DNA from: Macrostomum lignano
Lineage: Eukaryota
Direction: 5' to 3'
Length of the DNA stretch: 64,000 nucleotides
Assembly: GCA_002269645.1 (NCBI GenBank)
Contig: NIVC01000169.1
Coordinates: 310,001-374,000, forward strand
Part shown: positions 27,950 to 64,000 of the stretch, in pieces
How the letters are laid out: each line of letters begins with the position of its first letter
Numbering within the stretch: position 1 is the first letter of the stretch
Program-made: the position numbers and the translations under genes
Notes under the pieces: generated by a model
What the model saw: the letters and a program-made list of their open reading frames with translations, nothing else
What the model was told of the DNA's origin: nothing
Database searches by the model: none

Positions 27950-28660
27950 ATGAGGGAATCTAATCATCTCTGGATCTGGGATGTTAGGATCTAATGATCT
28001 GGGGAGCTAAGGATCTGGATATCTGGAGATCTGGGGATCTGGGGATCTAAGGATCTGGGGAGCCGGGGATCTAAGGAGCTGGTGATGAAAGGATCTGGGT
28101 ACCTGGATATTTAAGGATTTGGAGATTTAGTTATCTGGGGATGTGGGGATCTGAGAATTTGGGGATCTGGGGATCTGAGACTTTGGGGATCTGAGGATCT
28201 AGGGATTTGAGATCTGGAGATCTGAGGACCTGGCTATCTGGGGATCTGGGGATCTAAGGATCTGGGAATCTAAAGATCTGAATATCTAGGGATCTGAGGA
28301 TTTTGTGATCTAAGGATATGGGGATCTAAGGTTCTGGGGCTCTAAGGGTGGGGATCTAAGGATCTGTGGATCTGGGGATCTAAGTATCTGGGGATCTAAG
28401 GATCTGTGGATCTCGGGATCTGGAGATCTGGGGATCTGAGGATCCGGTATTTGGGGATCTGGGGATCTGAGGATTTGGCTATCTGTGATCTGGGGATCTG
28501 GGAATCTGGGGATCTAAGGATCTGGGAATCTGGGGATCTAAGGATCTGGGGATCTGGGGGATCTGAGGATCCGGTATTTGGGGATCTGGGGATCTGAGGA
28601 TTTGGCTATCTGTGATCTGGGGATCTGAGGATCTGGAAATCTAGGGATCTGGGAACATGA
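27950..28660. repeat. Third, most degenerate block of (GATCTGGGG)n satellite
   Basis: Direct reading. Confidence 0.9.
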
Positions 28661-45500: not shown

Positions 45501-48500
45501 TGACTAGATCAATCTAGCTAGTGACTAGATCACAGATGACATTCAATATTCCGCCTTTCACCAAGGCTGAGCGCTCGATCGGAGCTGTCAATCTCCAGCC
45601 AGTCGGTGACGGACGCGCACCACAACATGCCAATCGAGTGTAGCGCCCATGTGCCCGGGTTCGAGTCGGAGCCGGCTCTGACGGCCGGGACTCGCCTCTA
45701 CGTCAGCGTGCCTCCGCGGGTTCGCGTGGTCCTGGAGCCCCTGCGGCCTGGAAACCAGTACAGGGAGCACGACAATGTCATCGCGGTGTGCCAGGCTTTC
45801 GGCCGGCCAGATAACTTTACCTACAGGTACGGCTTTGGAACAGGGACAACTAAAACCTGCTTTGTCCCTGCTTTGGAACGAGTGAATAAAAATGAATTCC
45901 GGGACGTTTTTTTGCTAAACTGGCTACTAACAGTAGGACTTTCAGATTTTGATGTCTAAAAAACAATTGATTACACCTGCCCTACTGGGCAGATGTGCAA
46001 CCGACAGCTCAGCCGCAGCTATTGCACGGCGCATCTGAAGGCTGCGTACGGCTGTTCAGTCCAAGGACTCACCCAACTTCAATTACCCCAGCTAATGCTA
46101 ATTACCCCAGCTAATGCTAGCACCCATCTTACAGCTTTGGTGAACTGAAGCAATGTAGAGTTAAGTGTCTTGCTCAAAGACACAAATTGTTCCGAGTTGG
46201 GTCAAGAATGGAACCCCGACCTTCAAGCCGTGATTCCGACGCTCTAACCACTAGGCTACAACCCCCTGTTGTCGAAAAAATACCTCGGACGAAACACATG
46301 CTGGCTTCATTTGGAATTCGGAAGTTCAGAAGTTGAGACATTGCTGACCGCTGGCGCAAATTCAATGCAAGAAGTAGCTTCAGCCCCAGACATATTCTCA
46401 AAACCCCAGATGGGCCACTCCAGGCGCCTAGCCGCAGCGCGACCATAGACTGTAGTCCCGGGGGGGGGTCGCCAAGCCTGCTAGCAAGCTCTAAATTTAT
46501 ATAAATTTTTCTCCCCCTTTCAGTTGGACCATAGACAGTCTGGAGCCGATCATCCAGCAGTTCGGGCCGCGCCTCCCAATGCTTCTCACCCGTCGGCATG
46601 ACGGTCGGACCGTCCGCTGCTCGGCAACCAGCTTCGCCCGCGGCGAGGCTGAAGTCCGCCTGCGCGTCCACTACGGTCCGAAGTTCGCGCTCAACCTGCC
46701 CCGGCTGTACGCGGCTTCGCCGGGAGGCATCGCCAGCCTCGACTGCCGCGTCGAGTCCAGCCCGACGGCCTCTGTTGAATGGCGCCGCGTCGACAGAGGT
46801 GACGGCGATGTCCTTGGCCGATCGACGACGCTCCGTCTGGACCCGGTTGGCGAGGCGGACTTCGGCGAGTACACCTGCTCAGCCAGCGCGACCGGCTTCC
46901 CCACAGTGACGCGTCGAGTCATCCTGGCTAGGGCGGCGCCGCCTCGGGTTGTGTCGGCCGGCGTCCCGACGGCGGTGGCTGCGTCCGCGACGTCGTCTGA
47001 TGGAAGCGGCGTCAACGTCGATCGTCGGCGCTACGTAGTCGTGGCCGGCCAGCGATCGGTACGGTTGGAGTGCCGCGTCAATTCCGTGCCGCTGCCGATC
47101 GAGCCCGACGGCGTCCGATGGAGCCGCGGCGACGGCACCGCGGTGGAGCCCGGGCTCAGGTGCGATCAGAAAGCTGCCTGGAGTTGGTGAATGCTATCTG
47201 GAGTTGGTGAATGCTATCTGGAGTTGGTGAATGCTATGTGGAGTTGGTGAATTCTATGTGGAGTTGGTGAATGCTATCTTGGTTTGTGAATGCTATCTGA
47301 AGTTGGTGAATGCTATCTGGAGTTGGTGAACGCTATCTGGAGTTGGTGAACGCTATCTGGAGTTGGTGAACGCTATCTGGAGTTGGTGAATACTGCCTGG
47401 TGCTGGTGAATGGTATCTGGAGTTGGTGAATAGGTGTATTAGAAGCTGGATGACAAATAAACTATCCGACAGGCGTCGCCTCTACCGCGAAGACTTCGTA
47501 GGCGGCACGTCGGCCTTTCTGCACTTCGACGAGGTGCAGCCTTCCGACTCCGGGGAGTACAACTGCACCGCGGACAATGGGCTGGGCACCCACTCGGGCG
47601 TGATTCTGCTGCACGTGGAAGGTCAGCGGCTTATCCGTGACTTTGCGAAAATGCGATATGGACTTTACATGGCCTGTCTCGAACTCTATCTCACACCTGA
47701 TCTCCCACCTGATCTCACACCTGATCTCCCACCTGATCTCCCACCTGATCTCACACCTGATCTCCCACCTGATCTCCCACCTGATCTCACACCTGATCTC
47801 CCACCTGATCTCCCACCTGATCTCCCACCTGATCTCCCACCTGATCTCTCACCTGATCTCACACCTGATCTCCCACCTGATCTCACACCTGATCTCTCAC
47901 CTGATCTCCCACCTGATCTCCCACCTGATCTCACACCTGATCTCCCACTTGATCTCACACCTAATCTACCGATTCATTTGGGGTTTGTGCACGAAAATTG
48001 GTTGATGGTTTGTTGTGCGATTCACAGACATGAGGGCCGACCCCCCCCCCGAGGCACAGAGAGTGTACATGCCTGACGATTCGAAAGTCAGGACCGCAGT
48101 GCACCCTGTGTGAGCGTGTGCCTGAGTACAGTATTGGTGCGCTTGAATGTGCTCAGGACTCAGCGGACTGCGCAGAACTGCCTCAATTGCCTTATCACAT
48201 CTACGCTAACTTTCCCAACTTACCCAACACAACCTGAGCAACCCCACCTCAACCTTGGCAGAGAACATTCCCACGGCTTTCATAGCTGGCGCCTCTATCG
48301 CGCTGCTAATGGTGCTCATCTTCGTGCTTGTCCTGGTCTGCGTTTGTCGGCGAAGTAGATGGGAATCTGCTAACGACTCGACTAAAGGTAAGCGAACTGT
48401 GACATCCGGGTTTATTGAGTTGCATTTCGACTGGATTCTGGACTGGGACACTGGAGTGGGAGCTGAGACATTGGAGTGTGAACTGACATTAGGATGTAAA

Positions 48501-51500
48501 CTTAGACATTCGGATGTGAAGTGAGACATTAGAATCTGAGCTGAAACACAGGGATGTGAACTGGGACATTGGCCGGGAACTGGGACACTGGGTGTGAACT
48601 GAGACATAGGGATGGGAACTGGGATACTGGGATCTAAACTAAAACACTAGAATGTGAAATGAGACATTGGGATGGGAACTGGAAAACTGGGATGTGAAAT
48701 GAGACATTGGGATGGGGACAGGAAAACTGGGATGTGAACTGGGACACTGGGGTGTGAACTAGGACACTGGGGTGTGAACTGGGACACTGGGTGTGAACTG
48801 GGACACTGGGGTGTGAACTGGGACACTGGGGTGTGAACTGGGACACTGGGTGTAAACTGGGACTCTGTGGTGTGAACTGGGACACTGGGGTGTGAACTGG
48901 GACACTGGGGTGTGAACTGGGACACTCGGGTGTGAACTGGGACACTGGGGTGTGAACTGGGACACTGGGGTGTGAACTGGGACACTGGAATGTAGACTGA
49001 GACACTGGAATATGTGGATTAAGGCACTGTAATGTGAATTGAGACACCGGGAGGTGTCAGATAAAGATTCTAGGATAAGGATTATGACACTGGGATGCGT
49101 GGATTATGTCATGGGGATTTGGATTTAAATTTATGTAATGTTAACAAGTATTAGTTTACTAACTAAATTGCATTAAACAAACTACTCGATGCACTTCAAG
49201 CCCGCAAGAGAAATGGCTGCGTTGTCGCCGGCGCCCAGCCGGGAGGCCCAGCAGTCGAGTCGCCGTCCAAGCGGCTGCTGCAGCCTGGCGAGGACGCGGC
49301 GGATGACGTGGAAGCCAGCCAGACATGTACAGCCGGGCAGCCGCTGCTCGTCGACAGCTACCCGTTTGCAAACGAGACATCGTCCTTCATCCCGGCGAGC
49401 ACCTGCGCAGTCCACGGCAGCCTCCTTCGGCGACATCAGCAGCAGCAGCGAAACGCGCCAATTTCGTCGTCAATGACGACCTCCTGGGGCCCGTCGGGGC
49501 TCGAGCTGACGGACCTGAGTCCCGGGCACCGGGGCGTCGCCGTGGCGAGATTCCTGACCCGTCAGGGGCCCGGCAGTCCGTCCTGCCAGCAGACTGTGGC
49601 AGCAACGGGCGATGAAGCGCCTGAAGAAGCTGGACAAGAGGAGTGAGTAGAACCGCAGCCAGCTACTTGTAGTAGTGTGGCCCTGGTGGCTCGATTCCGT
49701 GTGCAAACCATGCATTTGCGGCTTGTGCAGGAAATTTGGTTGAAAGGCTGTCGTGTGATTCACAGCCATGAGGGCCAACCCCCAAGGCACAGAGAGTGCA
49801 CATGCCTGACGATTAGACAGTCAGGGCTGCTGTACACCCGATTGCTTGAGAAATAGATAGATGATATCTAGCTAGCTAGATAGCTTGCTTTCAGGGCTGA
49901 TTCAGGGCTTAAGGGGGTTGTAAGCCCAGTGGTTAGAGCGTCGGACCCACGACTTGAAGGTCGGGGGTTCGATTCTCGACCCACTCGGAACAATTTGTGT
50001 CCTTGAGCAAGGCACTTAACTTGCGCACTCGTGACCCTGGCCATTAACCTAAATTCTCGCTTCATATTAGCTGCACTGATTGAATTGTCTGTGGTCGAAA
50101 CAGGAGCTTCAGTTAATGACCAGCCATTAAGCAGAGGTCATTACCGTGAAGTAATGGACAGCTCTGCTTTTCTCTACCGATCAGCTCGATAAGCTCGAAA
50201 ATTCACAAGCTCGAAGCTTCATAGAACGTATAGAACTCCTTGCCCAGAAGTTCGAGTAGTTTTAGGATATGCCATAGACAAGTGGCAGTCGCCTACCCAC
50301 TGACAGCTACGAGCAAAGAGCCTTTCAACACACAATAAATTCGGCTAAAATAGTCTATGAGCAAGATTAGGTCAAATAGTACACACACCGACAATTGAAC
50401 TCTCTCATTGAATTTATGATTTATGACAGTCCTCTATGCCAAAGATCCGGTGCTGTGCGACATTGAATCGGGGTAGACAGCAGTGCAGAAACTCTCAAGT
50501 TCTAGCTCCGATGGCCTCGAGTGATTTGAGATGAGAAGCATTCGGGTGGAGAGGCTGGACGGCTAGCGACAGTGGCAGTGAGAACCTGCGCACCTGCTGC
50601 ATGCCTCATGGCAAGCCTAAGCTGCTACATATCTACCTTTCGTCTCAATCCTGAAATACAAGCCTCGATCATAATTAGCCACCTGATATTCGCGTTTATT
50701 AATTAGAAGCGCCTGAAAACACTGTAATCATGGAAGTGTGGCGCTGTCTGTTAAAATGATCGATAATTTCTGTACAGCATGACTAAGACTAGCTTGCAAC
50801 TGACATGAGCTGGATGACGATCAATGCCCAACGGTGCTAGTTATGTGGTTGGAGGGGTTGCAGCCTAGCGGTTAGAGCGTCGGACTCACGACTTGAAGGT
50901 CGGGGGTTCGATTCTCGACCCAACTCGGAACAATGTGTGTCCCTGAGCAAGACACTTAACTCACATCTGGCCCAATTGGGGCAAGTGTAATCAAATATTA
51001 TTGGCTTGTTTTACGAAAAACGTATTGAACGAAATAGCTAAGACGTAATTTATTAAAATCGATTCAAACATTAAATTATTTTGCATTACAACTTGGTCGA
51101 ACTTGCATGCAATAAAACGCAGTTACAGCAAACTTCATGCTAATCTTTGTTAGATGTTTTGAAGCAACAAATGTGTGTTACGAGCTCGTCATTAAATGAA
51201 ATTGTAACGTAAAAACTAGCTAGGACATTGAAAATATTCAGTTCTAGGATATTGGTTTGCTAAATACTGACCACTGCTAACCTCATTTCTTATGCTAACA
51301 ACAAATATTTTATAGGTAATTTCGAGGGCTAATTAAAATTCTGTCCAGTTTTGCTAATCCAATCCGAATTGAAACAGCTACTCATCAGAAAGTCATCCAG
51401 AATCCTGTCGACTGGCTTGTTCTATTTTTGAAGAAAGTTACCTGAGGTGCAAATTGTTAATTAGATCGATAATTAATTCAGTACTTGTTCGGGAGCCAAA

Positions 51501-52585
51501 CAAACAGGCACACGAAACAACATCGGAAGCAGCTTAACTCAGTCAAAGATAAAATTCTATAAACACCCCTAAAGAAACGTGTGCGCATCTTAGAAACTTT
51601 GTGAATATTCCAGATTGTGAATGTTCCAGATTGTGAATGTTCCAGATTGTGAATGTTCCAGATTGTGAATGTTCCAGATTGTGAATGTTCCAAATTGTGA
51701 ATGTTCCGAGTTGTTAATATTCCGGTTTGTGATATTCTGGTTTGTGAATATTCCGGTTTGTGAATATTTAATTTTCTAAAACTTCCGGTTTGTGAATATT
51801 CAAGATTGTGAATGTTCTGAGTCGTGAATATAATTCCGGTTTGTGAATATTCCGGTTTGTGAATATTTTGGTTTGTGAATATTCCAGTTTGTGAATATTC
51901 CGGTTTGTGAATATTTTGGTTTGTGAATATTCCAGTTTGTGAATATTCCAGTTTGTGAATCTTCCGAGTTGTGAATATTACGGTTTGTGATATTCCGGTT
52001 TGTGAAACTTCCGGTTTGTGAATATTCTGGTTTGTGATATTCCGGTTTGTGAAACTTCCGGTTTGTGATATTCCGGTTTGTGAAACTTCCGGTTTAGGAC
52101 ATTACCTTCAAATGTTTCAACTTTTCAGCAGCGTCAGGAGCTGCGACTCCGGCTACGGCGGCCCAGTCGCGTCCTGCACCGGGTCGTCTCGGTGCCCGAC
52201 TGCTTCCGGCAAGGCCAGCCAGTTAGGCTATCAGCAGCATCATCAGACTCTGGCTGGGGCAGCTTCATCGGGCGGTACAGCAGCCTCGGACTCGGGCGCC
52301 AGCTCGCCCGGCGGCCATCAGACGGTGCTCAGCCTGGCGACCTGCCCAGTGCACAGCGGATCGGTGACTCAGGCGGTTGGCTACGCCGGGGCCTGCTCCA
52401 CTCTGCTGCCCCTACCGCAGCTCAGAACGGCAGGCGTGGTCAAGTCTGTCAACTTCTCGCCGCCGCTGCCGCCGCCGCCTCAGCAGCAGAACACATTCGC
52501 CACTTTGTTGGCCAACAGACGCTTTCGGCAGCAGCCAGCCATCGCGGAAGATCCGGGCGCGGTGGTGGCCATCACGGAAGTCTGA
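33571..52585 (+). CDS. kirre: Kirre/Roughest/Neph1(KIRREL)/SYG-1-type Ig-superfamily adhesion receptor; join(33571-33649, 43010-43231, 44892-45291, 45566-45826, 46524-47159, 47473-47621, 48262-48387, 49201-49642, 52129-52585), 923 aa
   Basis: Hydrophobic leader exon, five Ig domains with C..W..(Y)xC signatures, one TM segment (AFIAGASIALLMVLIFVLVLVCVC-RRSR), low-complexity tail ending ITEV (class I PDZ ligand). All eight introns are GT-AG with matching phases; total 2772 nt. Orthology is inferred from architecture only. Confidence 0.8.
35840..36060. repeat. 14-bp minisatellite (AATCAGAGACAGGC)n
   Basis: Direct periodicity; begins at GCCAATCAG. Confidence 0.9.
37030..37135 (+). mobile_element. 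Short dispersed repeat, copy 1 of 3 (hammerhead-like core)
   Basis: GATTCACA..CATGA..GGGCCAACCCCC..GG..CAGAGAGT..ACATGCCTGACGATTAGAAAGTC..TGTACACCC shared with 47985-48115 and 49725-49840. Confidence 0.7.
37190..37495. repeat. 32-bp minisatellite (GTGACACAAGCGCGCAGACAATTTTGACGGCA)n
   Basis: Direct periodicity. Confidence 0.95.
37815..38095. repeat. 32-bp palindrome-rich minisatellite (CATTTGAAATGCGCGCTTGTTCCAGACGTCTG)n
   Basis: Direct periodicity. Confidence 0.95.
40110..40190. repeat. (TG)n microsatellite, interrupted
   Basis: Direct reading. Confidence 0.9.
42830..42905 (-). mobile_element. Diverged tRNA-derived SINE head / tRNA-like pseudogene
   Basis: Minus strand has B-box GGTTCGAACCC and ends GGGCCA; GGACTCTCGTACTTAAG resembles the GGACYCACGACTTGAAG of the other SINE copies; no proper cloverleaf. 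Confidence 0.45.
43330..43880. repeat. 39-bp minisatellite in kirre intron 2
   Basis: ttcttggct at 43501 and 43540. Confidence 0.95.
44615..44880. repeat. Degenerate ACAACCGCAACCTCC-based repeat abutting the exon 3 acceptor
   Basis: Direct reading. Confidence 0.8.
45355..45532. repeat. 21-bp minisatellite (TAGCTAGTGACTAGATCAATC)n in kirre intron 3
   Basis: Direct periodicity. Confidence 0.9.
46158..46266 (-). mobile_element. tRNA-derived SINE, minus-strand copy
   Basis: Reverse complement of copies at 49913 and 50854 (A box TGGTTAGAGCG, B-box region, TGTGTCTTTGAGCAAGACACTTAAC). Confidence 0.85.
47178..47432. repeat. 20-bp minisatellite (CTGGAGTTGGTGAATGCTAT)n in kirre intron 5
   Basis: Direct periodicity. 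Confidence 0.95.
47690..47965. repeat. 12-bp minisatellite (CACCTGATCTCM)n in kirre intron 6
   Basis: Direct periodicity. Confidence 0.95.
47985..48115 (+). mobile_element. Short dispersed repeat, copy 2 of 3 (hammerhead-like core)
   Basis: CTGACGA-TTC-GAAA at 48073-48086; similar to copies at 37030 and 49725. Confidence 0.7.
48540..49030. repeat. 19/20-bp minisatellite (GGGTGTGAACTGGGACACTG)n in kirre intron 7
   Basis: Direct periodicity with degenerate flanks. Confidence 0.9.
49725..49840 (+). mobile_element. Short dispersed repeat, copy 3 of 3
   Basis: CTGACGA-TTA-GACA at 49806-49819; similar to copies 1 and 2. Confidence 0.7.
49913..50022 (+). mobile_element. tRNA-derived SINE with CORE-like central domain
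   Basis: A box TGGTTAGAGCG, B box GGTTCGATTC, then TGTGTCCTTGAGCAAGGCACTTAAC resembling the CORE/MIR motif TGTGTGACCTTGGGCAAGTCACTTAAC; another conserved-domain SINE superfamily is not excluded. Confidence 0.85.
50854..50963 (+). mobile_element. tRNA-derived SINE, second plus-strand copy
   Basis: Closely similar to 49913-50022. Confidence 0.85.
51600..52095. repeat. 16-bp minisatellite (TTGTGAATATTCCRGW)n before the last kirre exon
   Basis: Direct periodicity, degenerate. Confidence 0.9.
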
Positions 52586-52589
52586 CTTT

Positions 52590-53100
52590 AGTTAGCTAGA
52601 CACAAACTGAGGTAGCTAGACGCAATCTGAGGTATCTAGACACAAGCTGACGTAGGTAGACACAAATTGGGGTAGCTAGACACAATATGAGGTAGCTAGA
52701 CACAAACTGGGGCAGCTAGACACAAACTGAGGTAGCTAGACACAAACTAGGGTAGCTAGACACAAACTGGGGTAGCTGGACACAAACTGGGGTAGCTAGA
52801 CTCAAACTGAGGTAGTTAGACACAAACTGAGGTAGCTAGACACAAACTGAGGTAGCTAGACACAAACTGAGGTAGCTTTACACAAGCTGACGTAGGTAGA
52901 CACAAATTGGGGTAGCTAGACACAAACTGAGGTAGCTAGACACAAACTGGGGTAGCTAGACACAAACTGGGGTAGCTAGACACAAACTGAGGCAGTTAGA
53001 CACAAACTGAGGTAGCTAGACACAAACTGGGGTAGCTAGACACAAACTGAGGTAGCTAGACACAAACTGGGGTAGCTAGACACAAACTGGGGTAGCTAGT
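52590..53100. repeat. 20-bp minisatellite (GGTAGCTAGACACAAACTGR)n, block 1, immediately after the kirre stop
   Basis: Direct periodicity. Confidence 0.95.
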
Positions 53101-53724
53101 AGACACGATAGTGGCATAGTTAGTACAGATACATGTAATATAGCCAATACTGCACTTTATAACGATAAATGCACAACCAATTTGAGCATAATTTTCTCAC
53201 AAAATTCTAGAATTCATTGTTTACTATTAATAATTTTTGTATAATATTAATAATTATTCGTAAATTATTTTCAAAATATTTCTCGCCCGATTTAATCCTG
53301 AATTCAAAGCAACATAAACAGTTAAGTTTTCATCAAAGCCATTAATTTATTATTGCGTTTGCCCTTCAGATCTCATTAATTAAAACAAATAAGATTTTAG
53401 ATATATTTATAGACTTTCTAGATATTGTCAGTATGCACTTATGCCACTACAGCAAACTTTCAGTATTCATATATTACTTAAACATGTGAATTCAGTGTGT
53501 TGCTGTATAGTATGTATTCTGTTCATTCTATTTTTCTGCTACCATAATAATTAAAACAATTTCGCCCGATCACCTGCTTCTGCCCGATGAGTCATTTGTG
53601 AATACTGTTGCAACAAAAATATCTGCATATTTTACAAGTGCAAATCTGTCGCCAGCATTGCGAACTAACCTTTTTAGCAGATATTTATCACCAGGAAAAT
53701 ATATTTAATAAGAGACAGAATTGG

Positions 53725-54350
53725 CTAGACACAAACTGGGGTAGCTGGACACAAACTGAGGCAGCTAGACACAAACTGAGGTAGCTAGACACAAGCTGGG
53801 ATAGTTAGACACAAATTGGGGTAGCTAGACACAATCTGAGGTATCTAGACACAAACTGAGGGAGCTAGACACAAACTGGGGTAGCTGGACACAAACTGAG
53901 AGAGCTAGACACAAACTGGGGTAGCTAGACACAAACTGGGGTAGCTGGACACAAACTGAGAGAGCTAGACACAAACTGGGGTAGCTAGACACAAACTGGG
54001 GTAGCTGGATACAAACTGGGGTAGCTAGACACAAACTGAGGTAGCTAGACACAAACGGAGGTAGCTAGACACAAACTGGGGTAGCTAGACACAAACTGAG
54101 GTAGCTAGACACAAACGGAGGTAGCTAGACACAAACTAGGGTAGCTGGACACAAACTGAGGTAGCTAGACACAAACCGGGGTAGCTGGACACAAACTGGG
54201 GTAGCTAGACACAATCTGAGGTATCTAGACATAAACTGGGGTAGCTAGGCACAAACTGAGGTAGCTAGACACAAACTGGTGTAGCTGGACACAAACAGAG
54301 GTAGCTAGACACAAACTGGGGTAGCTGGACACAAACAGAGGTGAACACAA
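53725..54350. repeat. Same 20-bp minisatellite, block 2
   Basis: Same unit as 52590-53100. Confidence 0.95.
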
Positions 54351-54807
54351 ATTGGGCTGGTAGACAATGTGAGGTACATGTACATGTAGAAATCTTAAAT
54401 CTCAAACCCAGTCAGGAGAATATCTTCGCTCTCCTCAATTCTCCAAGGAGTTGGAGGCAAGGTAAAACAGGGGAGAATTTCCTGAGCACATCCTCTTGAA
54501 ATTTGACCTTGACAAATGGAAACTGAGAGTACATGACCATATCAAATGAATAAGCATTGACAGTCACAGCTTTCTACTGCATAGCACGCAGCTCTCACTG
54601 TAGGATATTGATTTAAAGATTTCTCTAGCTTTGGCACTTTTTTGTCTAGAGCTCATTTCCTACTCTGCGCGTCAATGCTATGGGATTATCAGATGCATGG
54701 ATTTCGGATTATATTGACGAGCAGTTGCGAGGGTCTGGTGGCCCGGGGCGGCCAAAGCCTGCAGTCAGTTGCGCCTAAAGAGGGAATGACTTCAGGGAAC
54801 TTTTATG

Positions 54808-55503
54808 TCCCCTCACCGATGCTTCAGTGAGCGGCTCCTATTCCCTCACCGATGCTTCAGTGAGCGGCTCCTATTCCCTCACCGATGCTTCAGTGAGCGG
54901 CTCCTATTCCCTCACCGATGCTTCAGTGAGCGGCTCCTATTCCCTCACCGATGCTTCAGTGAGCGGCTCCTATTCCCTCACCGATGCTTCAGTGAGCGGC
55001 TCCTATTCCCTCACCGATGCTTCAGTGAGCGGCTCCTATTCCCTCACCGATGCTTCAGTGAGCGGCTCCTATTCCCTCACCGATGCTTCAGTGAGCGGCT
55101 CCTATTCCCTCACCGATGCTTCAGTGAGCGGCTCCTATTCCCTCACCGATGCTTCAGTGAGCGGCTCCTATTCCCTCACCGATGCTTCAGTGAGCGGCTC
55201 CTATTCCCTCACCGATGCTTCAGTGAGCGGCTCCTATTCCCTCACCGATGCTTCAGTGAGCGGCTCTTATTCCCTCACCGATGCTTCAGTGAGCGGCTCT
55301 TATTCCCTCACCGATGCTTCAGTGAGCGGCTCCTATTCCCTCACCGATGCTTCAGTGAGCGGCTCCTATTCCCTCACCGATGCTTCAGTGAGCGGCTCCT
55401 ATTCCCTCACCGATGCTTCAGTGAGCGGCTCCTATTCCCTCACCGATGCTTCAGTGAGCGGCTCCTATTCCCTCACCGATGCTTCAGTGAGCGGCTCCTA
55501 CCC
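54808..55503. repeat. Near-perfect 33-bp minisatellite (CCCTCACCGATGCTTCAGTGAGCGGCTCCTATT) x about 21
   Basis: Direct periodicity; no spacers. Confidence 0.97.
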
Positions 55504-56587
55504 CTCTCACTGATCCTTCAGTTAACAGATAGCCTGTTTTTTGAAAGTAAAATAACCTAACAATATTTATTACACCTGCTGTGATCGTGTCTATATTGAT
55601 ATAGGCTATAGGTCTCCATAAGCAATCTCTATATAATCTATCAGTATCCAGGGAATCGCAGGCTGCTTGTTATACGTGAGCCGTGGAAAATACAATTTAG
55701 AAAACGCATTAGCTATGCATAATGGCAAGCAGTTCACTTTCATTGTAATTTACTCGCAAAGCTCTTCTCGTCCTAGATGGCAGGCTCTATGTGTTGCAGA
55801 TTCTGAGTAGGGAATACAATTCTATTCAAAAATGGAAAGTCATATGGCTAATGAATTCAGGATGCCTTCACAGCTTCAGAAAAATAATTATTTTACTCTC
55901 ACCTCCAACCAAGCAGCTCAGCATTTTTCTCGGGGCGCGCACTGGCATGGATTTTCGATGATTGCCAGCACAATGCAGTAACCCATCTCTCGGTATGACA
56001 GAGTATATAGCTTCTATAGGCTAGCTTTCAGTTTAGCTGCTGACAGAAGAATCAATGCCAATTTGCATCAAGCTTTTGGATACGACAGATAGGGGTTCCA
56101 GACTTATGCTATTTTAATTTTTAATCACGCGTACTCGAGCATGGGTATACATGTACTACACCTTGCAGAGCCTGCAGACTGAGAAGCAGAGTTTAATTGA
56201 ACAGGATTCCTTTGACTATTTCCCTTGATATGGTCCTGTGCGCAGACGAGTTACCGGCAATCTCGGAGTGTGCATCTGATTATGCACGAACAAGACATTG
56301 AGTTCCTTAGGCAGTCCATAGTGGTTACGAGTAGCTTCTCAGTAGTATGTATTGATAGGGAACTTTCCAAAGCTCCCCTAAGGGAGTCAGGAAGCTGGGC
56401 CTACTCTTCGAACAACCAAGGAGACGAGGAATAAACTGCGATATAGCAGACTAAATTGTTCAGTTCACAATTGTTCAGAGTTCTTATTTTGTTATATGCG
56501 TCGTCTATATAGCACATGCAATAGATAACGTGTTTAACAAATCAGTTCGCACGTGCAGGACGCGGACGGGACGGAACGGATATCGAG

Positions 56588-57112
56588 TCACTCGTCAAAA
56601 CGCTTGAACCGGTCAGGCCTAGCGTCAAAGTACGAGCCCGTCCGGTAGAACCGTCGAAACCGATTTGCCTGCTTGAAACCGAACAGTCGCTTGGCGTCGC
56701 GTCGTCGAAATCGGTCCAGCGGAGTGCCGAACAGACGCTTGTACCTGTCAGGAGTGCCGAACAGACGCTTGTACCTGTCAGGAGTGCCGAACAGACGCTT
56801 GTACCTGTCAGGAGTGCCGAACAGACGCTTGTACCTGTCAGGAGTGCCGAACAGACGCTTGTACCTGTCAGGAGTGCCGAACAGACGCTTGTACCTGTCA
56901 GGAGTGCCGAACAGACGCTTGTACCTGTCCGGACTTCCGAACAGAGACCGGCTGACAGACCAGTCACTGACGACACCGTTGTCCGTCTCGGCGAAGCCAT
57001 CCTCGCCGCGCAGAGGCTGCCCGTCGGAAAGTGAAGCAAAGACTGTCATAGCCAAAAGCAGCGCGACCAGGAGGCGCCCGGCCTGGCCCAGTGAGACAAC
57101 TTTGCTGCGCAT
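56588..57112 (-). CDS. Neuropeptide precursor (prohormone), 174 aa, with tandem LFGTPDRY peptides
   Basis: ATG at 57112, 8 nt after an acceptor-like ctctccag; signal-like RLLVALLLAMTVFASLSDG; acidic spacer; peptides separated by KR/RR/RRR: (S)LFGSPDRY, 6x LFGTPDRY, LFGTPLDRF, LFGFKQANRF, FYRTGSYFDARPDRF, FDE. Confidence 0.9.
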   Translation of the reverse strand: MRSKVVSLGQAGRLLVALLLAMTVFASLSDGQPLRGEDGFAETDNGVVSDWSVSRSLFGSPDRYKRLFGTPDRYKRLFGTPDRYKRLFGTPDRYKRLFGTPDRYKRLFGTPDRYKRLFGTPDRYKRLFGTPLDRFRRRDAKRLFGFKQANRFRRFYRTGSYFDARPDRFKRFDE

Positions 57113-59869
57113 CGGCAAAACTGGAGAGGACTAGGCTGGTTAGATTTATCGAAGCAAAATTTATCTGCCAAGACTTGGTAACATCGGTAAGATTTCCTGT
57201 AGCGGACGGCGCTTATATAATAGCGGATGATCGTCCGTTCACTAGCTCTTTCGTGCACCAATCCGGGGAGGCCTTAGCCAACAAGGCCGTGCAGTGTGAC
57301 GTCTATCGGGAAGGAATCGAGGCGTCCTATTGAAAGAGCGCTCCACTGCATGCGAGTGATGAAATTGCAAATCTTTGTGAGACCCAGCGGCTTGTACCGG
57401 GATGTGCGCTTTAATGTTTCCTCACATAGGATAAAGAAATAGGTAACTTTTTTCCACGATAGCTACAGCTTCTGACGCATAAGAAGGCAATGCGCATCGA
57501 GTAATAGAAAATATATCGGAATGCGAGCTGGCCGCCTCTCCTTTGACTTTCGTATCCATCTCCCTCGGGCGCCAAGGTAATAAAGCGCCTATAGCGGATA
57601 CAAAGCTGTATTTTTGCAGATAAAAAAACGTGCCAATGACTGTAGAGATGCGATAGCGAGGTAATATTGCAGCATAAATTACTCAACCGATTGGACACGA
57701 ACTACTCAAATTTGCAAACTACCGATTTATTTGCATACAGCTACATGGATTCCGGGCCATGCGTCATGCTATTGCCGTTCTAAGGAAACGTTGGAGACAC
57801 ATTTATTAAATGTAGTTTAGTCAAGCTAAGCTAAATTCAATCCTTCAATAATGGCATTCTGATTTGCTACAAAGAACTCTGTAACCATTTCAGTCAGCCG
57901 TCATACGCAGCCGGCACTGCGCATTTCAATTAGGTAAATGAGTAGGCAAGAGCAATTTTTGCAGGGGAAAGCGTTTTAAACAAAATTCAAAGGTTTCGAG
58001 TGGCTCGCAGGTAGATGAAAAAGCCCAACTCGCTGGGACAGGGAACCGAAGATTTGGTTCAGATTTTGCGAGGAGAAATCTATCCAATAGACCACAAGCT
58101 GTTGTACTTACATCTAATATCCATTCGCAGATCGGGAAAGACCAGACTGTTGTGGTATTGTATAAAACACTTGGGGCAATAATTCAAAATAAAAGCAATA
58201 CAAGCCATATACCTATAAGACCTGCTGCTTCCCATTCCCAACCAGATGGGATCTTGTAAGTCCCAGCACGGGTCTCGCTCATATTTTTGCTCCCTTGGGA
58301 AGAGCTCTGCAGCGGGATTGGGGCAGATCAAGCCGCTCTAATGAATACGAGCTAAAATCTGTGTGCTAAAACAAGTGCTCAGAGCGGCGGGAGAATGAAG
58401 CGAAGAGAAAGAGGGAATTAAAAATTTAGCAATAAGACCACCCATGCAAAGAGTTTTAATTCCAGGCATCGATTAAATCCCATTGGCTTTGTGGTCGCGC
58501 ATGCAAGGCGAACAACATTGGCGATTTGTCAAACTTGCTGCATACATTATATACAGCTCGTTGCATTCCTAAATTTTTACTTTGAGATAGCCAACTGCTA
58601 TGACAACAGCTCGTTAAGACGCACACAGCCAGGCATGCGGCAGAAATCCCGACAAAAAGTATTTGCTTAAAAAAGCCAAACAAAGAACCACCACAGCTCA
58701 AGCAGCATTGACAGAGTGTGCCCGAGCATTGATGTAAGCAACAGCTCCAATGGAAAATTTCTGTGCGGAATTTGATACAGCATGCGACTATATACAGGTT
58801 CTAGAGAGGTGCAATTCATGCTTGGCTTTTCCACCCGCTTTAGACAATGCCAGCTATTCAACACTTTAAAGCTGGAGCACTAGGATTTCAATTGCCCCCC
58901 CCCCCCTACTTCACAGGCTTGATTAGATTGAAAGGCAAATCGTCATAAAAATCGTTGGCTTCTCAAATTTTTCATTTCGCACGGCTAGCTTCGTGCGAGG
59001 AGGGAGAATCGGGAGATCAAATTAGCAGCTTAGCATTTCCAAAAGATCAATAATCATCGCCTTCTTAAATATGGAAAGAACTATAATATTCCCCTTTACA
59101 TGAACTCACTTTTAACAAATTGATCTTATTTTAAATGCAACTGGGCACCTTGCTGCAAAATTTGCAACGGAGCTTTGAGAGCCAGTGCGCCCTGGCTTCA
59201 CATGATTTGCTTTCTTCATCAACAAAAATTCGGCCCAATGCCAGCCAACCGACACGCTTCTAGTTATAAATATAACCGACCTTATCTGGCGCGCTTTTGA
59301 CGCCAACATCTTGTTTTGATGCAAAGTATTGCATTACAATCGCTACAAGTTTATATTTCAAATTTCCCTAAGAAAAATAAAGGAATGAAGTCGATTTTTT
59401 TCGCTTTCGATTTTACGCATGTTGATCAAACGTCAAAAAGCAAACGTAGATACACGTATATTTTAAAATACGCTATCCATGAGACTGCTACTAGAAGTAG
59501 AAATAAAAGCAAATTTGAATGCTCAATATTTCATTAAATAAACTGACGGAGAAAGCTACATAAGTTCAGACAAGTGAATGAGTCGAACAAACAAACGTAT
59601 AAAATAACAAACACGCACTCACTGATGATAAGTGCATGCCTAATTAAATGTGCATGTAATTATATCCTGGCTGCACTGAAAATACATTTAACGCGAGACC
59701 GGGACTTAGAGGAAGGCATCTAAAGCACAGAATAGAATACAAGTAGCTGATCATCAATGCAAACTTTTGGGCAAGTATGCACATCTAGTATCATAGCAGA
59801 ATAGCATGGCTTTCGTGCTTAAGCATTGCATATATTACATGGCGCCATATACCATGGCGCTGGCGGAGT

Positions 59870-60215
59870 ATGTAGGGGCGGATAGAGTATTTAATGGCGG
59901 ATAGAGTATCAAGGGGCGGATGGAGTATTGAGGGCGCGGACGGAGTATTTAGGGGCGGATAGAGTATCAAGGGGGCGGATAGAGAATAAAGGGGGCAGGT
60001 GGAGTACCAGGTGGTGCGGATAGAGTATTTAGGGGTGGATAGAGTATCAAGGGGACGGGTGGAGTATTTAGGGGCAGATGGAGTGTAAAGGGGTGGGTGA
60101 GTATAAGGTAGGGCGGATGGAGCATAAAGGGGGCGGATAGAGTATCAAGGGGGCGGATAGAGTATTTAGGGGTGGATAGAGTATCAAGGGGGCGGGTGGA
60201 GTGCCAAGGTGCGAT
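59870..60215. repeat. Degenerate 20-22-bp repeat (GGGGCGGATAGAGTATYWA)n
   Basis: Direct reading. Confidence 0.8.
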
Positions 60216-60439
60216 GGATCATAAATCGATAACTTCAGCAAGCACTAGAATGTATTAAATCTAATTATTTAAATTGCTACATAGAAGCTAGGTCCCATTA
60301 GAAGACAAGTTAACAATCTGCAATCGCGCCTGGATGCACACTGCACCGTAATAATCTAGCGGGTGCCGATCGTAGGCCATCCACCACCTGCACTCTCCGG
60401 AGGGGGACCGCGCTGCGGACACCAGCATCACAGAATCAC

Positions 60440-60516
60440 GCAATATATATAGCCGAATGGGTGTCGACGCCTCCTCGCTGATGCCCGGAGCCCCTGCAGC
60501 TAAGTCAAGCAAGTCA
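60440..60516 (+). mobile_element. Second, diverged 3' stub of the retroelement family at 12863-12980; 5' boundary uncertain
   Basis: TAGCCGAATGGGTGTCGACGCCTCCTCGCTG matches TAGCAGAATGGGCGCCCGCGCCTTCCCGCTG; shared end CCCTGCAGCTAAGTCAAGYAAGTCA; no TSD found. Confidence 0.65.
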
Positions 60517-61428
60517 ATCGTTGGCTATGGAAGCAACATCCGGCGCGTCAGACGTCGTAGGCGTCGGTGACGGCTCAGACATTGGCGATGGTGGCGGCAT
60601 CGCCGCCTCGGTGTCAACCTTGGCAGCTTCTGGCGAATAATCTAAATTTTCTTTTTTACTACTATTAGTACTGGAATAGCCAGCCAGATGAAAATAGCAC
60701 CGAGTTCGATCGCTAAGCTGAAACGAATTAAACTTGCAACCGTCGTATTCGTCTTTGAGAGTCTCGCGGACGCTGTCAAGCACTAATACTAGTCTGTAGC
60801 GCCGGACCAACTGCGGCCAGAGCTGCGGATCCATCAGTGCCGTATTGGCAAAGCTAAATACAATCATATCGGCCGGCGGCAGATAGGCCTCGTGGCCAAT
60901 ATCTTTAAATCGGAGCGGTTTGAACCACAACGAGGAGCCAGTATTGACTAGATGCGCGTCCAACGCGGACACGTAGTCGGCCCAGCTGTCGCACTGGTCA
61001 ATCATGTAGAATACAATGCGCTGCTGCTCTTGCAGTTCGGCTTTTTCTTGCTCCTGTTGCTGCTGCTGCTGCGGCAAGCCGCAACCAAGAAAGGCTAACA
61101 GGCCAATGGCATCGGAGCCGGGACCGCAGCCAATGCTGATAACGTGCCTAACAGAGCGTAGAAAATCCATGAATTCGGGCACGTCGGCGCATATCCGATC
61201 GGCAGCCTGGATGTAAGACCTGGCGGATATTGCTAGCCGGTTAATACAATAGGAGGCTCGAAAGAATTCATTCTGATAGCTGGCCATGAAGCACTCTTTG
61301 CGGGTTCGACGGCACCAATGATCGTATAGACGCTCGCCAGATTTATTCAAGTCTTTGCTTAGCACCTTGTTGGCGTGCTCAATCAGTGGCTTTGATAGCC
61401 AGGCTAGGTAAGAATCACGACTGCTCAT
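60514..61428 (-). CDS. Intronless class I SAM-dependent methyltransferase-like protein, 304 aa
   Basis: Non-repetitive ORF; motif I VISIGCGPGSD, acidic end of beta-2 (FYMID), motif IV-like ADMIVFSF; polyQ insert; P/S/T-rich tail. Substrate unknown. Confidence 0.75.
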   Translation of the reverse strand: MSSRDSYLAWLSKPLIEHANKVLSKDLNKSGERLYDHWCRRTRKECFMASYQNEFFRASYCINRLAISARSYIQAADRICADVPEFMDFLRSVRHVISIGCGPGSDAIGLLAFLGCGLPQQQQQQEQEKAELQEQQRIVFYMIDQCDSWADYVSALDAHLVNTGSSLWFKPLRFKDIGHEAYLPPADMIVFSFANTALMDPQLWPQLVRRYRLVLVLDSVRETLKDEYDGCKFNSFQLSDRTRCYFHLAGYSSTNSSKKENLDYSPEAAKVDTEAAMPPPSPMSEPSPTPTTSDAPDVASIAND

Positions 61429-64000
61429 ATCTCCCAGCTGGCTGAGTAGGATAGGTTCTGATTTGCACTGTTTCGCATGCAGTTGAGTAGGGTCTGTTTA
61501 GTTAACAAGTCAGCAGAACATGGAAACAGGTATTAATGTATTCAGGGTTTTTGTTTTCCCTGCTAATGACAAGTTGCTAATGACACAAATGTCTGACAGA
61601 CTGCAGAGTAAGCTTATGATAATTTTCATTGGAATCAATTTTATATACCTAAACCTCAATAGAGGCATAGAGGGATAAAAGTTTTGGAGGGGGCGTCCAA
61701 AGGAGTGACCAACCGAAAGGTCAATGACCAACAACTAGAGCATAGGGAATCAAGGTGTTCAATACCTAAACTTCAATATAGGTATAGGGATCTATTGAAG
61801 ATCAAGTAATATAAAATTTTGACCCAATTAAAAATGAAGCTTAAATATCTAAATAACCCATGCCATGAGTAACCCATATAGAAAAGAAATTGTAGTCCTA
61901 TCAAAACTAGAAGTTCTGTGTGTGTATCCTAAACTCTGTTCAATAAAGACTTGATACCTCTTTAAGATTAGGTAGATTATTAATTCATTAAGCATATATT
62001 GTTTTACATTTATGTTTAATAACAAACCAGAATAGTTAACAGTTATAATCTATAGGGGATAAACAAATCAAGCTCCTATCATCACCAAAGCCAAGGGTAA
62101 ACATTTGCAGATTTAGCTTTTTTATCATTTATGATACCCCTTGACTGCCTGGCAAAGTTTAAAAAAATCAGAAAATTAGAAGTTTTTTATATCTTTAAGG
62201 TTCAAAAAGTCCTAATTATTAGGAATATTAAATATTATTAAATATTGGGACCTAATATTTGAGTAGTTATTCAATATTTATTAGCTTCTAAAAGGATATA
62301 CATATCATAGACAATTAAGCTTGACTTGGCTAGATTAGAGCATGTTGGGCCCAAGATAGGCTAGGCAAATTTTGACTTAAGCCAGGATGGGCCACAGCTA
62401 TAGTGGCATATATACTCAACTTAGAAAATGTTGAGTTAGTGGCAACATCTTGTATACATGTAGCTAACTAATAGTTAAAATTTAGGCTTCTGACATTTTA
62501 TAAACATTGTCTCTAAAGTATTCAGTTCAGTATACTCAAGATAGCAAGAATAAATAACCTTAAACAAATCAAAAGGGTTGCTATTCTAATATGAATCATA
62601 TAAAGTGTTTTAGGTGACTGATCCTTTAGTCTAATCAATGTTCCTTGACCCTCCTAGTATATATGTTACTTTTAACTTATGTAAAAAATATTTTAGTTGT
62701 TAGAACAAGGAAACTTATAAAATACCTATAGTAAGTAGTCAAGGGATATGGTATTCAAGCTATAGACATTTTAAGACACCTATTTAAAGCTCAACAAAAG
62801 TTTATCAGTGTAATCACTTTTAAAATAATTGTACTACTTGTACACAATGCATTGGCATAGTGTATTCTTGAAATATATATCAACATGCTGCTTATGAACA
62901 ATGCAATCAATCATTACAAGTTAGGTGTTGCTGGAAAGCGGCTTTTAACTTCTACAATTTGCTACTAGAATCATTTGGTTCCATCAGTTTTTATCAAAAG
63001 TTACAACTACATATGTAGCAATAGGTCACCTATAGACTTACAGTAAGTCAACAAGTTAACAAAATTTCAAAGTGATAGCTCACAAATGGCTAACTGGCTA
63101 CAATGAATACTAAAAAATGATTGCAGTAAATGACTAAAATAAACCCATGAGCCAATGAAAGTTGAGCATGAATCTTAGCTCAACTATGCCCTATCCCCAA
63201 AGGGTGTTTCTCACACTCCTTTGAGCAACACTTGAATGCATATCCAAGACTTTTAGCGTAGCAAAAGGAGGGAACAAAAAGCAATAAAGTTTGAAATATT
63301 CTGTTGCTTTAAAAGCTATATGCTTCTCCAAGTTTCTCCATAGATATCTCTTTGTCACAGCAGCCTAACAAAGAAGTCTGAAAGCATTCAATCAAAAGTA
63401 CTCTTGCTACTTTTCACTAGCTAGCTTCCACTAGCTTTACGAGTATAAATTAGGCTATAAACTTTTCCTTCAAGTTCCTCCTTCTTCATTCTATCAAAAT
63501 TCCTATTTTTCTTTATATTACTCATATGTTTATATTTGAAAATGACCAAACAAAATTATTAGTATTTTTAATTCTATTAAAATGCACTGGGATAAGCAGT
63601 TTCTATTTTTTTGCTTCAATGTATAGTGTTATATTTCCAATTTTTTCATTTATTGGTTTTTTATATCATTGGGGGAGACATTATTCCCAATAAAAACTAT
63701 GGGCCTAGGGACATGCAAATGCTTTGTCTTTATCATTTAGGCCTCATTAATATTACCTAGTAAACCATAAATTATGATAATCAATAATTTTGATTTGAGG
63801 CAATAAAACAGCCTCTGAAGTGCCAAAATGAGTATGCCAACAACACCAAAATTAAAAATAATGTATACTATACATAAAGGCCCTAAAGACAATTAAACTG
63901 CAACATATATACAGGATGCAATACTTACATTTCATGGAAAAAGTTTTGAATGCCACTTTTTATTTAAAAAACACTATGTCTCTATGAAGATAAGAACTTT

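What the first reader, a model, noticed from the sequence alone, without database searches (positions are those of the whole stretch)
56588..57112. Unassigned multi-copy neuropeptide precursor yielding non-amidated LFG...DRY/DRF peptides
It has classic prohormone layout (signal peptide, acidic spacer, dibasic sites), predicting 6x LFGTPDRY plus (S)LFGSPDRY, LFGTPLDRF, LFGFKQANRF and FYRTGSYFDARPDRF. All end in RY/RF but lack the Gly amide donor, so they would be free-acid analogues of RF/RYamides. I cannot match LFGxPDRY to a family I know; the terminal KR-FDE faintly recalls orcokinin/pedal-peptide starts. This is a candidate new peptide signalling system with an unknown receptor.
Basis: partly seen in the sequence, partly recalled or inferred. 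Interest (0 to 1): 0.75.

Follow-up and report, generated by a model that had tools for sequence, protein, structure and literature searches.

The report
Flatworm multi-copy secreted peptide precursor gene
This is a real, transcribed gene of the flatworm Macrostomum lignano that looks like a peptide-hormone precursor releasing about ten short non-amidated peptides (mostly LFGTPDRY); no relative was found outside this species, and neither its tissue nor its receptor is known.

Summary
Window 56588-57112 (-) is an uninterrupted 174-codon ORF. It has a signal-peptide-like N-terminus, an acidic spacer and 11 di/tribasic sites. These release 6x LFGTPDRY plus (S)LFGSPDRY, LFGTPLDRF, LFGFKQANRF and FYRTGSYFDARPDRF. 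There is no Gly amide donor and no Cys.

The window is Macrostomum lignano assembly Mlig_3_7. The gene is already in GenBank as 'hypothetical protein' BOX15_Mlig016576g1. Two near-identical paralogous copies exist, and all three genomic ORFs are intact. The GenBank models come from RNA-seq, so the locus is transcribed, but they wrongly skip 3-5 repeat units.

The older, diverged units keep LFG...(D/N)R(Y/F)+basic through synonymous codon changes. That argues for a coding sequence rather than a chance ORF in a minisatellite-rich genome.

An exhaustive HMMER search of 1.84 billion representative proteins, a word-index search of 5.8 billion proteins and literature searches found no relative outside M. 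lignano. The gene fails the tests for RFamide/RYamide, luqin and orcokinin/pedal-peptide families.

Ten R-x-K/R-R motifs suggest the conserved Arg may serve convertase recognition rather than mimic RFamides.

Best reading: a lineage-restricted multi-copy peptide prohormone. This is a common kind of gene. Neuronal expression, processing and a receptor are all untested. Interest is modest.

The parts
56588..57112 (-). Complete single-exon CDS (174 aa plus stop) of the peptide precursor, GenBank BOX15_Mlig016576g1
   Evidence: L002 (NIVC01000169.1) is 100% identical to window 50588-63112.
57026..57112 (-). Signal-peptide-like N-terminus, aa 1-29: MRSKVVSLGQAGR | LLVALLLAMTVFA | SLS. The cleavage point is approximate.
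   Evidence: Hydropathy profile (heuristic only; SignalP was not run).
56948..57025 (-). Acidic spacer or propeptide, aa 30-55: DGQPLRGEDGFAETDNGVVSDWSVSR (6 acidic and 2 basic residues), ending in a single Arg
56915..56947 (-). Older diverged unit (S)LFGSPDRY-KR. It differs from the main unit at 3 bases: 2 synonymous and 1 Thr-to-Ser.
56735..56914 (-). Six DNA-identical 30-bp units, each encoding LFGTPDRY-KR (a recent tandem expansion). Each unit contains CAG|GTAC, which lets aligners draw GT-AG 'introns' inside the array.
56699..56734 (-). Diverged unit LFGTPLDRF-RRR, with an in-frame Leu insertion, Arg codon changed AGG to CGA, and Tyr to Phe
56687..56698 (-). Short linker DA-KR
56651..56686 (-). 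Diverged unit LFGFKQANRF-RR
56600..56650 (-). Longest unit, FYRTGSYFDARPDRF-KR. It keeps P-D-R-F-K-R using different Arg and Phe codons.
56588..56599 (-). C-terminal remnant FDE plus the TGA stop
57212..57219 (-). TATATAAG (TATA-box-like), -107 to -100 from the ATG, identical in all three paralogous loci
   Evidence: Sequence only; function inferred.
57258..57303 (-). Upstream promoter-like motifs conserved in the three copies: GACGTCA (CRE-like, -191 to -185) and GATTGG (inverted CCAAT, -151 to -146)
   Evidence: Short motifs that could occur by chance.
57121..57128 (-). Polypyrimidine-CAG, 8 nt before the ATG: a possible (trans-)splice acceptor
   Evidence: M. lignano trans-splices about 39% of its genes (PMC5730564). 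Use at this site is inference only.

Best explanation
The gene encodes a small secreted preproprotein of Macrostomum lignano that works as a multi-copy peptide prohormone. The proposed steps are:
1. The signal peptide directs the protein into the ER and is removed near residue 29.
2. In the secretory pathway a subtilisin-like convertase (PC2-type or furin-type) cuts after each KR, RR or RRR.
3. A carboxypeptidase E/D-type enzyme trims the basic residues.
4. The cell releases 6 copies of LFGTPDRY plus (S)LFGSPDRY, LFGTPLDRF, LFGFKQANRF and FYRTGSYFDARPDRF. All have free C-termini, because no Gly donor for amidation is present.
5. The peptides most likely act as extracellular signals, neuropeptide or hormone, on a receptor not yet identified.

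The six identical units are a very recent minisatellite-type expansion of an older precursor that already held about four diverged copies.

Shown: the ORF, its architecture, three intact paralogous copies, a transcript-derived gene model, and motif conservation at the amino-acid level. Inferred: signal-peptide cleavage, convertase processing, secretion, neuronal or endocrine origin, and signalling function.
For: Architecture: signal-like N-terminus, acidic spacer, 11 di/tribasic sites separating 8-15-aa units, 10 R-x-K/R-R motifs, no Cys and no Gly-basic.

Coding constraint: the diverged units conserve LFG and (D/N)-R-(Y/F)-basic-basic through synonymous codon changes and in-frame indels.

Paralogues: three loci in Mlig_3_7 carry intact ORFs of 174, 184 and 174 aa. 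The non-repeat CDS shows 0-2 substitutions and no indel in 345 bp. The flanks show 1.4-1.9% mismatches and roughly one gap per 160 bp.

Transcription: the GenBank annotation of Mlig_3_7 was built only from genome-guided RNA-seq transcript assemblies (PMC5730564), and all three loci carry models.

Processing machinery: M. lignano has a PC2 homologue expressed in the nervous system, and its RNAi is lethal (PMC4490696).

Precedent: species- or clade-specific multi-copy peptides, some non-amidated with aromatic C-termini (LWDY, AWDF, MRF), are commonly reported proneuropeptides (PMC6188537).

Peptide chemistry: the main peptides carry no net charge and are only 8-9 residues long, which fits signals better than cationic antimicrobial peptides.
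Against: No expression pattern, peptidomic detection or receptor is known. The three gene IDs were not found in the held supplements of four M. lignano transcriptome papers.

No orthologue was found outside M. lignano, so there is no deep conservation to argue for function.

The two substitutions between paralogues in the non-repeat CDS are both non-synonymous. The sample is too small to show purifying selection between copies.

Sites that conform to the furin consensus fit constitutive secretion from non-neuronal cells equally well.

The signal peptide was judged by hydropathy only.
Confidence: 0.55

Rival explanations
1. The same processed multi-peptide precursor is made by non-neuronal secretory cells (epidermal or other gland cells, gut, prostate/seminal fluid). 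It would be cleaved by furin in the constitutive pathway. The peptides would act outside the animal or on a mating partner as a pheromone, an allohormone, or a defence or immune effector.
For: Ten R-x-K/R-R motifs match the furin consensus. The gene is restricted to one lineage and its copy number evolves fast (6 versus 7 units, with variants LFGTTDRY and LFGTPGRY). That pattern is typical of reproductive, defence and pheromone genes, and reproduction-related genes evolve rapidly in Macrostomum (PMC7336406 title and abstract). Furin-processed multi-peptide precursors outside the nervous system are known, for example Drosophila Baramicin, honeybee apidaecin and yeast alpha-factor (my own knowledge, not tested here).
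Against: The main peptides are neutral octapeptides, unlike typical cationic antimicrobial peptides. No expression data were found that place the gene in any gland or reproductive tissue. The gene IDs were not found in the held supplements of the neoblast/germline re-analysis, though those files may be incomplete.
Confidence: 0.3
2. The gene is young, transcribed and ORF-bearing, but the product has no selected function. The prohormone look would be an accident of a 30-bp minisatellite that happens to encode KR in a genome full of such arrays.
For: About a third of the window is minisatellite, including other 30-bp arrays, and long ORFs through arrays are common. No homologue exists outside the species. 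The six units are DNA-identical, so they carry no information on selection. Both paralogue differences in the unique CDS are non-synonymous.
Against: The four older units differ at many bases yet keep LFG and DR(Y/F)+basic through synonymous changes and in-frame indels. A well-formed signal-like N-terminus and a conserved TATA promoter are present. The ORF is intact in all three copies while the flanks have accumulated many indels.
Confidence: 0.08
3. It is a diverged member of a described family (FMRFamide-like/RYamide/luqin, or orcokinin/pedal peptide) that has lost amidation.
For: The peptides end in RY or RF. Flatworms have (G)YIRFamide-type peptides (mentioned in PMC4490696). The precursor ends in KR-FDE.
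Against: None of the 11 sites has Gly before the basic residues, and there are no Cys. There is no sequence match to any annotated neuropeptide precursor in 1.84 billion representative proteins or 5.8 billion word-indexed proteins. There were no motif hits in the Schmidtea prohormone supplements or in Schistosoma neuropeptide text. FDE is a three-residue remnant, not a peptide.
Confidence: 0.05

Closest known systems
Lineage-specific multi-copy peptide (MCP) proneuropeptides, e.g. xenacoelomorph LWDY, AWDF and MR(F) peptides (Thiel et al. 2018, PMC6188537)
   Same: A small secreted precursor with many short paracopies separated by dibasic sites. Some of these families are non-amidated with an aromatic C-terminus. 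They are restricted to one clade or one species and have no assigned receptor.
   Different: There is no sequence relationship. Several of those families were supported by mass spectrometry or found in multiple species, whereas this one has neither. Here six units are DNA-identical, which points to a very recent expansion.
Flatworm npp/spp prohormone genes (McVeigh 2009; Collins 2010, PMC2953531; Koziol 2016)
   Same: Same phylum, same general precursor logic, and dependence on a PC2-type convertase known in flatworms.
   Different: No similarity was found to any of them, either in the database searches or in motif searches of Collins' supplements. The McVeigh 2009 and Koziol 2016 texts could not be read here, so comparison with their full lists is indirect.
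RFamide/RYamide peptides (FLPs such as GYIRFamide, luqin/RYamide, NPF)
   Same: C-terminal Arg followed by an aromatic residue.
   Different: There is no Gly amidation donor at any site, no luqin-type Cys pair and no NPF-length peptide. The Arg sits at P4 of the cleavage motif, which may explain its conservation.
Orcokinin / pedal peptide family
   Same: Non-amidated, multi-copy, KR-flanked.
   Different: Those peptides are about 13-20 residues long and have an N-terminal (N/P)FD(E/S)I-type motif. Here the units are 8-10 residues starting with LFG, and only a terminal FDE tripeptide resembles that motif.
Furin/Kex2-processed repeat precursors outside the nervous system (Drosophila Baramicin, honeybee apidaecin, yeast alpha-factor). 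Cited from my own knowledge.
   Same: Tandem identical peptides separated by R-x-K/R-R or KR sites. Copy number evolves quickly.
   Different: There is no sequence relationship, and those products are antimicrobial peptides or pheromones with a different chemistry. Relevance depends on the tissue of expression, which is unknown.
Met-enkephalin-Arg-Phe from vertebrate proenkephalin. Cited from my own knowledge.
   Same: A natural bioactive peptide with a free-acid ...RF C-terminus, showing that non-amidated RF ends can be functional.
   Different: Unrelated precursor and an opioid YGGF core. It is an analogy only.

Membership tests
Generic proneuropeptide / peptide prohormone (a kind, not a homology family) | N-terminal signal peptide | tested here: met
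   Basic n-region, 13-residue hydrophobic core (Kyte-Doolittle mean up to 2.9) and a small-residue c-region. This is a heuristic; SignalP was not available.
Generic proneuropeptide / peptide prohormone | Multiple short related peptides flanked by di- or multibasic convertase sites, in a precursor shorter than about 500 aa | tested here: met
   11 sites and 10-11 peptides in 174 aa.
Generic proneuropeptide / peptide prohormone | The gene is transcribed | tested here: met
   Indirect evidence: GenBank models for Mlig_3_7 derive only from RNA-seq transcript assemblies (PMC5730564), and all three loci carry models. The reads themselves were not inspected.
Generic proneuropeptide / peptide prohormone | Expression in neurons or endocrine cells and packaging with PC2 | not testable with these tools
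   No expression data were found for Mlig016576, Mlig015463 or Mlig028865.
Generic proneuropeptide / peptide prohormone | Mature peptides detected biochemically | not testable with these tools
   No M. lignano peptidomics was found in the searchable library.
RFamide / RYamide peptides (FLP, NPF, luqin/RYamide) | Gly immediately before the basic cleavage site, giving a C-terminal amide | tested here: not met
   No G[KR][KR] anywhere in the protein.
Luqin / RYamide | Conserved pair of Cys in the C-terminal part of the precursor (from my own knowledge of the family) | tested here: not met
   The protein contains no Cys.
Orcokinin / pedal peptide | Repeated peptides of about 13-20 aa with an N-terminal (N/P)FD(E/S)(I/L) motif (from my own knowledge of the family) | tested here: not met
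   The units are 8-15 aa and start with LFG or FYR. FDE occurs once, as a three-residue C-terminal remnant.
Described flatworm npp/spp families | Detectable sequence similarity of the precursor or of the mature peptide motif | tested here: not met
   Only M. lignano paralogues were found among 5.8 billion and 1.84 billion proteins. There were no motif hits in Collins 2010 text or supplements or in a Schistosoma neuropeptide paper. The McVeigh 2009 and Koziol 2016 lists were not readable.

The most novel reading that the evidence does not exclude
LFGxPDRY and its relatives are the ligands of a peptide signalling system specific to macrostomid flatworms. In this reading a free-acid ...DR(Y/F) C-terminus, rather than an amide, is the receptor determinant, acting on an orphan GPCR or a peptide-gated channel. 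Because M. lignano has transgenesis and RNAi, it would be a tractable case of the recent birth and rapid copy-number evolution of a neuropeptide gene.
Probability: 0.3. Interest if true: 0.45.

Novelty: new member of a known kind. Interest (0 to 1): 0.3.

Why it matters
If confirmed, this gene would add an orphan, non-amidated peptide family to the poorly charted peptide repertoire of Macrostomum lignano. That species is the only flatworm with routine stable transgenesis, so expression, knock-down and receptor pairing are all feasible.

It is also a clean example of a very recent tandem expansion inside a multi-copy peptide gene: units are DNA-identical, and copy number and variants differ between the subgenome copies.

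On the practical side, the three GenBank models are wrong in the repeat region. They give 124, 144 and 144 aa where the genomic ORFs are 174, 184 and 174 aa.

The finding does not bear on any long-standing open question. Lineage-restricted multi-copy peptide precursors turn up in almost every neuropeptidome survey.

Tried and rejected
1. Pfam scan of the protein. The only hits were repeat-driven artefacts (UbiD_N, Nucleoporin_FG and similar). Rejected.

2. Exhaustive phmmer against 1.84 billion representatives. It gave 143 hits below 1e-3, all driven by 10-residue periodicity in unrelated repeat proteins. A regex scan found no hit with KR-flanked LFG...R[YF] units other than the M. lignano paralogues.

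3. The best look-alike, P0017 (LFSSPVRYRK units). It is an ORF called with an alternative genetic code, has no signal peptide, and sits on a 1-kb, 29%-GC contig of a fragmented assembly. Rejected as a minisatellite coincidence. P0033, a secreted repeat protein from a xylariaceous fungus (PFGKPDDFKH units), has no dibasic sites and was also rejected.

4. Exact-protein look-up of the window ORF. Nothing was on record, because the deposited models skip repeat units.

5. Literature full-text searches for the peptides and for site-spanning hexamers: zero papers. Searches for a Macrostomum neuropeptidome or peptidome found none.

6. McVeigh 2009, tried by DOI and by PMC id: not held.

7. Supplement searches for the three gene IDs in four M. 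lignano transcriptomic papers: no real hits, only unrelated orthogroup numbers.

8. Paralogue comparison as a test of selection. There are too few substitutions to decide: 2 in 345 bp, both non-synonymous. The lower divergence and the lack of indels relative to the flanks are only suggestive.

9. The annotated 'introns' as real splicing. The three copies skip 5, 4 and 3 units inconsistently, and every unit offers CAG|GT. I read this as a short-read alignment or assembly artefact. It is in-frame and would change only the copy number.

Full report
**What is there**

Window 56588-57112 on the minus strand is an uninterrupted 174-codon ORF. An in-frame TAG lies 18 nt upstream of the ATG, so the start cannot lie further upstream without splicing. 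The translation has these parts, in order:
- MRSKVVSLGQAGRLLVALLLAMTVFASLS, signal-like
- DGQPLRGEDGFAETDNGVVSDWSVSR, an acidic spacer
- (S)LFGSPDRY-KR
- 6 x LFGTPDRY-KR
- LFGTPLDRF-RRR
- DA-KR
- LFGFKQANRF-RR
- FYRTGSYFDARPDRF-KR
- FDE

Tandem Repeats Finder reports a 30-bp x 7.5 array with 98% matches. The six central units are identical at the DNA level. There are 11 di/tribasic sites, no Gly directly before any of them, and no Cys. The hydrophobic core at residues 14-26 reaches a Kyte-Doolittle mean of 2.9 over 11 residues. It is preceded by basic residues and followed by S-L-S. That fits a signal peptide, but SignalP was not available.

**Where it comes from**

A database search returned only two proteins, both 'hypothetical protein' of Macrostomum lignano. 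The locus fetched for one of them (L002, GCA_002269645.1, contig NIVC01000169.1) is 100% identical to window 50588-63112. The window is therefore the Mlig_3_7 assembly of this free-living flatworm, and the gene is BOX15_Mlig016576g1 (PAA88951.1).

Two further copies exist:
- BOX15_Mlig015463g1, on NIVC01001384.1
- BOX15_Mlig028865g1, on NIVC01000153.1

Their flanks are about 96-98% identical to the window. This is expected for a neopolyploid genome (PMC10733133 abstract).

All three genomic ORFs are intact, at 174, 184 and 174 aa. The copies differ in unit number (6 or 7) and carry the variants LFGTTDRY, LFGTPGRY and LFGFEQANRF.

The deposited products are shorter, at 124, 144 and 144 aa, because the models skip 150, 120 and 90 bp, which is 5, 4 and 3 units. 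Each unit contains CAG|GTAC, so a GT-AG 'intron' can be drawn between any two units. The inconsistent number of skipped units suggests a short-read alignment or assembly artefact rather than real splicing. That reading is inference. Either way the skip is in-frame and changes only the copy number.

**Real gene or chance ORF?**

Caution is needed. Roughly a third of the window is minisatellite, including an 8-kb array with a 30-bp period, and long ORFs run through many of these arrays. Four observations set this ORF apart.

1. The older units flanking the perfect repeats differ from it at many bases yet keep the peptide pattern. Gly is encoded by GGC, GGA and GGT. The Arg before the aromatic residue is encoded by AGG, CGA and CGG. 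Pro is CCT or CCG. Tyr/Phe and Lys/Arg exchanges are conservative, and the length differences are in-frame. This is the signature of selection on the amino-acid sequence in this frame.
2. The ORF is intact in all three copies. The non-repeat CDS (345 bp) shows 0-2 substitutions and no indel, against 1.4-1.9% mismatches and about one gap per 160 bp in the flanks. This is suggestive but not significant, and both substitutions are non-synonymous.
3. The GenBank annotation of Mlig_3_7 was generated solely from genome-guided RNA-seq transcript assemblies (PMC5730564). A gene model at all three loci therefore implies transcription.
4. A TATATAAG at -107 to -100, an inverted CCAAT and a CRE-like GACGTCA are conserved upstream in all three copies. 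A polypyrimidine-CAG 8 nt before the ATG could serve as a (trans-)splice acceptor. These promoter readings are inference from short motifs.

**How it most likely works**

The layout is that of a multi-copy peptide prohormone: signal-peptide removal, cleavage after KR/RR/RRR by a subtilisin-like convertase, and trimming of the basic residues by a carboxypeptidase. This would release about ten peptides of 8-15 residues. With no Gly donor the products are free acids.

M. lignano has a PC2 homologue expressed in the nervous system whose knock-down is lethal (PMC4490696), so the processing machinery exists.

The invariant Arg before the C-terminal aromatic residue may therefore be conserved for convertase recognition. 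This weakens the idea that the peptides are free-acid analogues of RF/RYamides. It also leaves open constitutive, non-neuronal secretion.

The main peptides carry no net charge. That fits signalling peptides better than cationic antimicrobial peptides.

**Comparison with known families**

- Sequence searches. Pfam gave only repeat artefacts. An exhaustive phmmer search of 1.84 billion representative proteins gave 143 hits, all driven by 10-residue periodicity. None combines KR-flanked LFG...R(Y/F) units with a signal peptide. The closest look-alike, with LFSSPVRYRK units, is a spurious alternative-code ORF on a 1-kb AT-rich contig.
- Literature. Full-text searches for the peptides returned nothing. 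The motifs are absent from the Schmidtea prohormone paper and its supplements and from a Schistosoma neuropeptide paper. No Macrostomum neuropeptidome exists in the searchable library. McVeigh 2009 and Koziol 2016 could not be read.
- Membership tests. The defining amidation Gly of RFamide/RYamide families is absent. The luqin Cys pair is absent. The orcokinin/pedal-peptide motif is absent, and FDE is only a three-residue remnant.
- Best fit. The best description is an orphan, lineage-restricted multi-copy peptide precursor. Such precursors, including non-amidated ones ending in aromatic residues, are found routinely. One example is the 14 clade-specific types plus 16 single-species precursors in xenacoelomorphs (PMC6188537).

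**What remains unknown**

The tissue of expression, actual processing, the receptor, and the distribution in other Macrostomum species are all unknown. The protein databases used here appear to hold no other macrostomid proteomes. The gene IDs were not found in the held supplements of four M. lignano expression papers.

**Verdict**

My estimates for the readings are:
- neuronal or endocrine multi-copy peptide prohormone: about 0.55
- the same kind of precursor from non-neuronal secretory cells: about 0.3
- functionless young ORF: about 0.08
- diverged member of a described family: about 0.05

Novelty: a new member of a known kind. Interest: modest, 0.3.

Noticed in passing
window 56735-56914; L001 6001-6555; L003 6001-6525: All three GenBank gene models of this gene (BOX15_Mlig016576g1, Mlig015463g1, Mlig028865g1) skip 5, 4 and 3 repeat units as 'introns'. 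They give products of 124, 144 and 144 aa where the genomic ORFs are 174, 184 and 174 aa. This looks like a repeat-collapse or spliced-alignment artefact, helped by the CAG|GTAC in each unit.
   Followed up: yes
window 3764-11826: An 8-kb minisatellite: 30-bp unit x 268 copies at 99% identity, with strong AT and GC skew. Two spurious ORFs of more than 2,500 codons run through it.
   Followed up: partly
window 52593-55522: Directly downstream of the peptide gene lie a 33-bp x 21.6 array (54810-55522, 98% matches) and two 20-bp arrays (52593-53099 and 53724-54336). The paralogous loci hold arrays matching the same units in the corresponding position. No coding role is apparent.
   Followed up: partly
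window 15853-16359 (-) and 18727-19092 (-): Two ORF fragments match the Homeobox_KN (TALE) domain, with [13 protein letters not shown] and KRKNATRE...NPYPTKGEK. They are probably exons of an Iroquois/TALE-class homeobox gene interrupted by minisatellite-rich introns.
   Followed up: partly
window 44705-47190 (+): ORF fragments with immunoglobulin domains (Ig_3, I-set), probably exons of an Ig-superfamily cell-adhesion gene.
   Followed up: partly
window 60514-61428 (-): A 304-aa ORF annotated as a gene about 3.4 kb upstream of the peptide gene, on the same strand. It is present in all three paralogous loci at 301, 304 and 329 aa. It has no Pfam hit. It contains a poly-Q/E stretch and an IGCGPGSD motif reminiscent of SAM-methyltransferase motif I; that resemblance is unverified.
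   Followed up: no
window 24555-25617, 26472-27146, 27941-28653: Three related arrays built on GATCCCCA/CTGGGGAT 8-mers (periods 8, 16 and 24) in both orientations. They produce many overlapping repeat ORFs and a local GC peak of 0.59.
   Followed up: no
window 25650-26096 (-): A 148-aa ORF with an internal Met followed by a hydrophobic, signal-like stretch (MFCPIVLLLIVALSTASD) and several Cys. It has no Pfam hit and may be an exon of a secreted protein.
   Followed up: no
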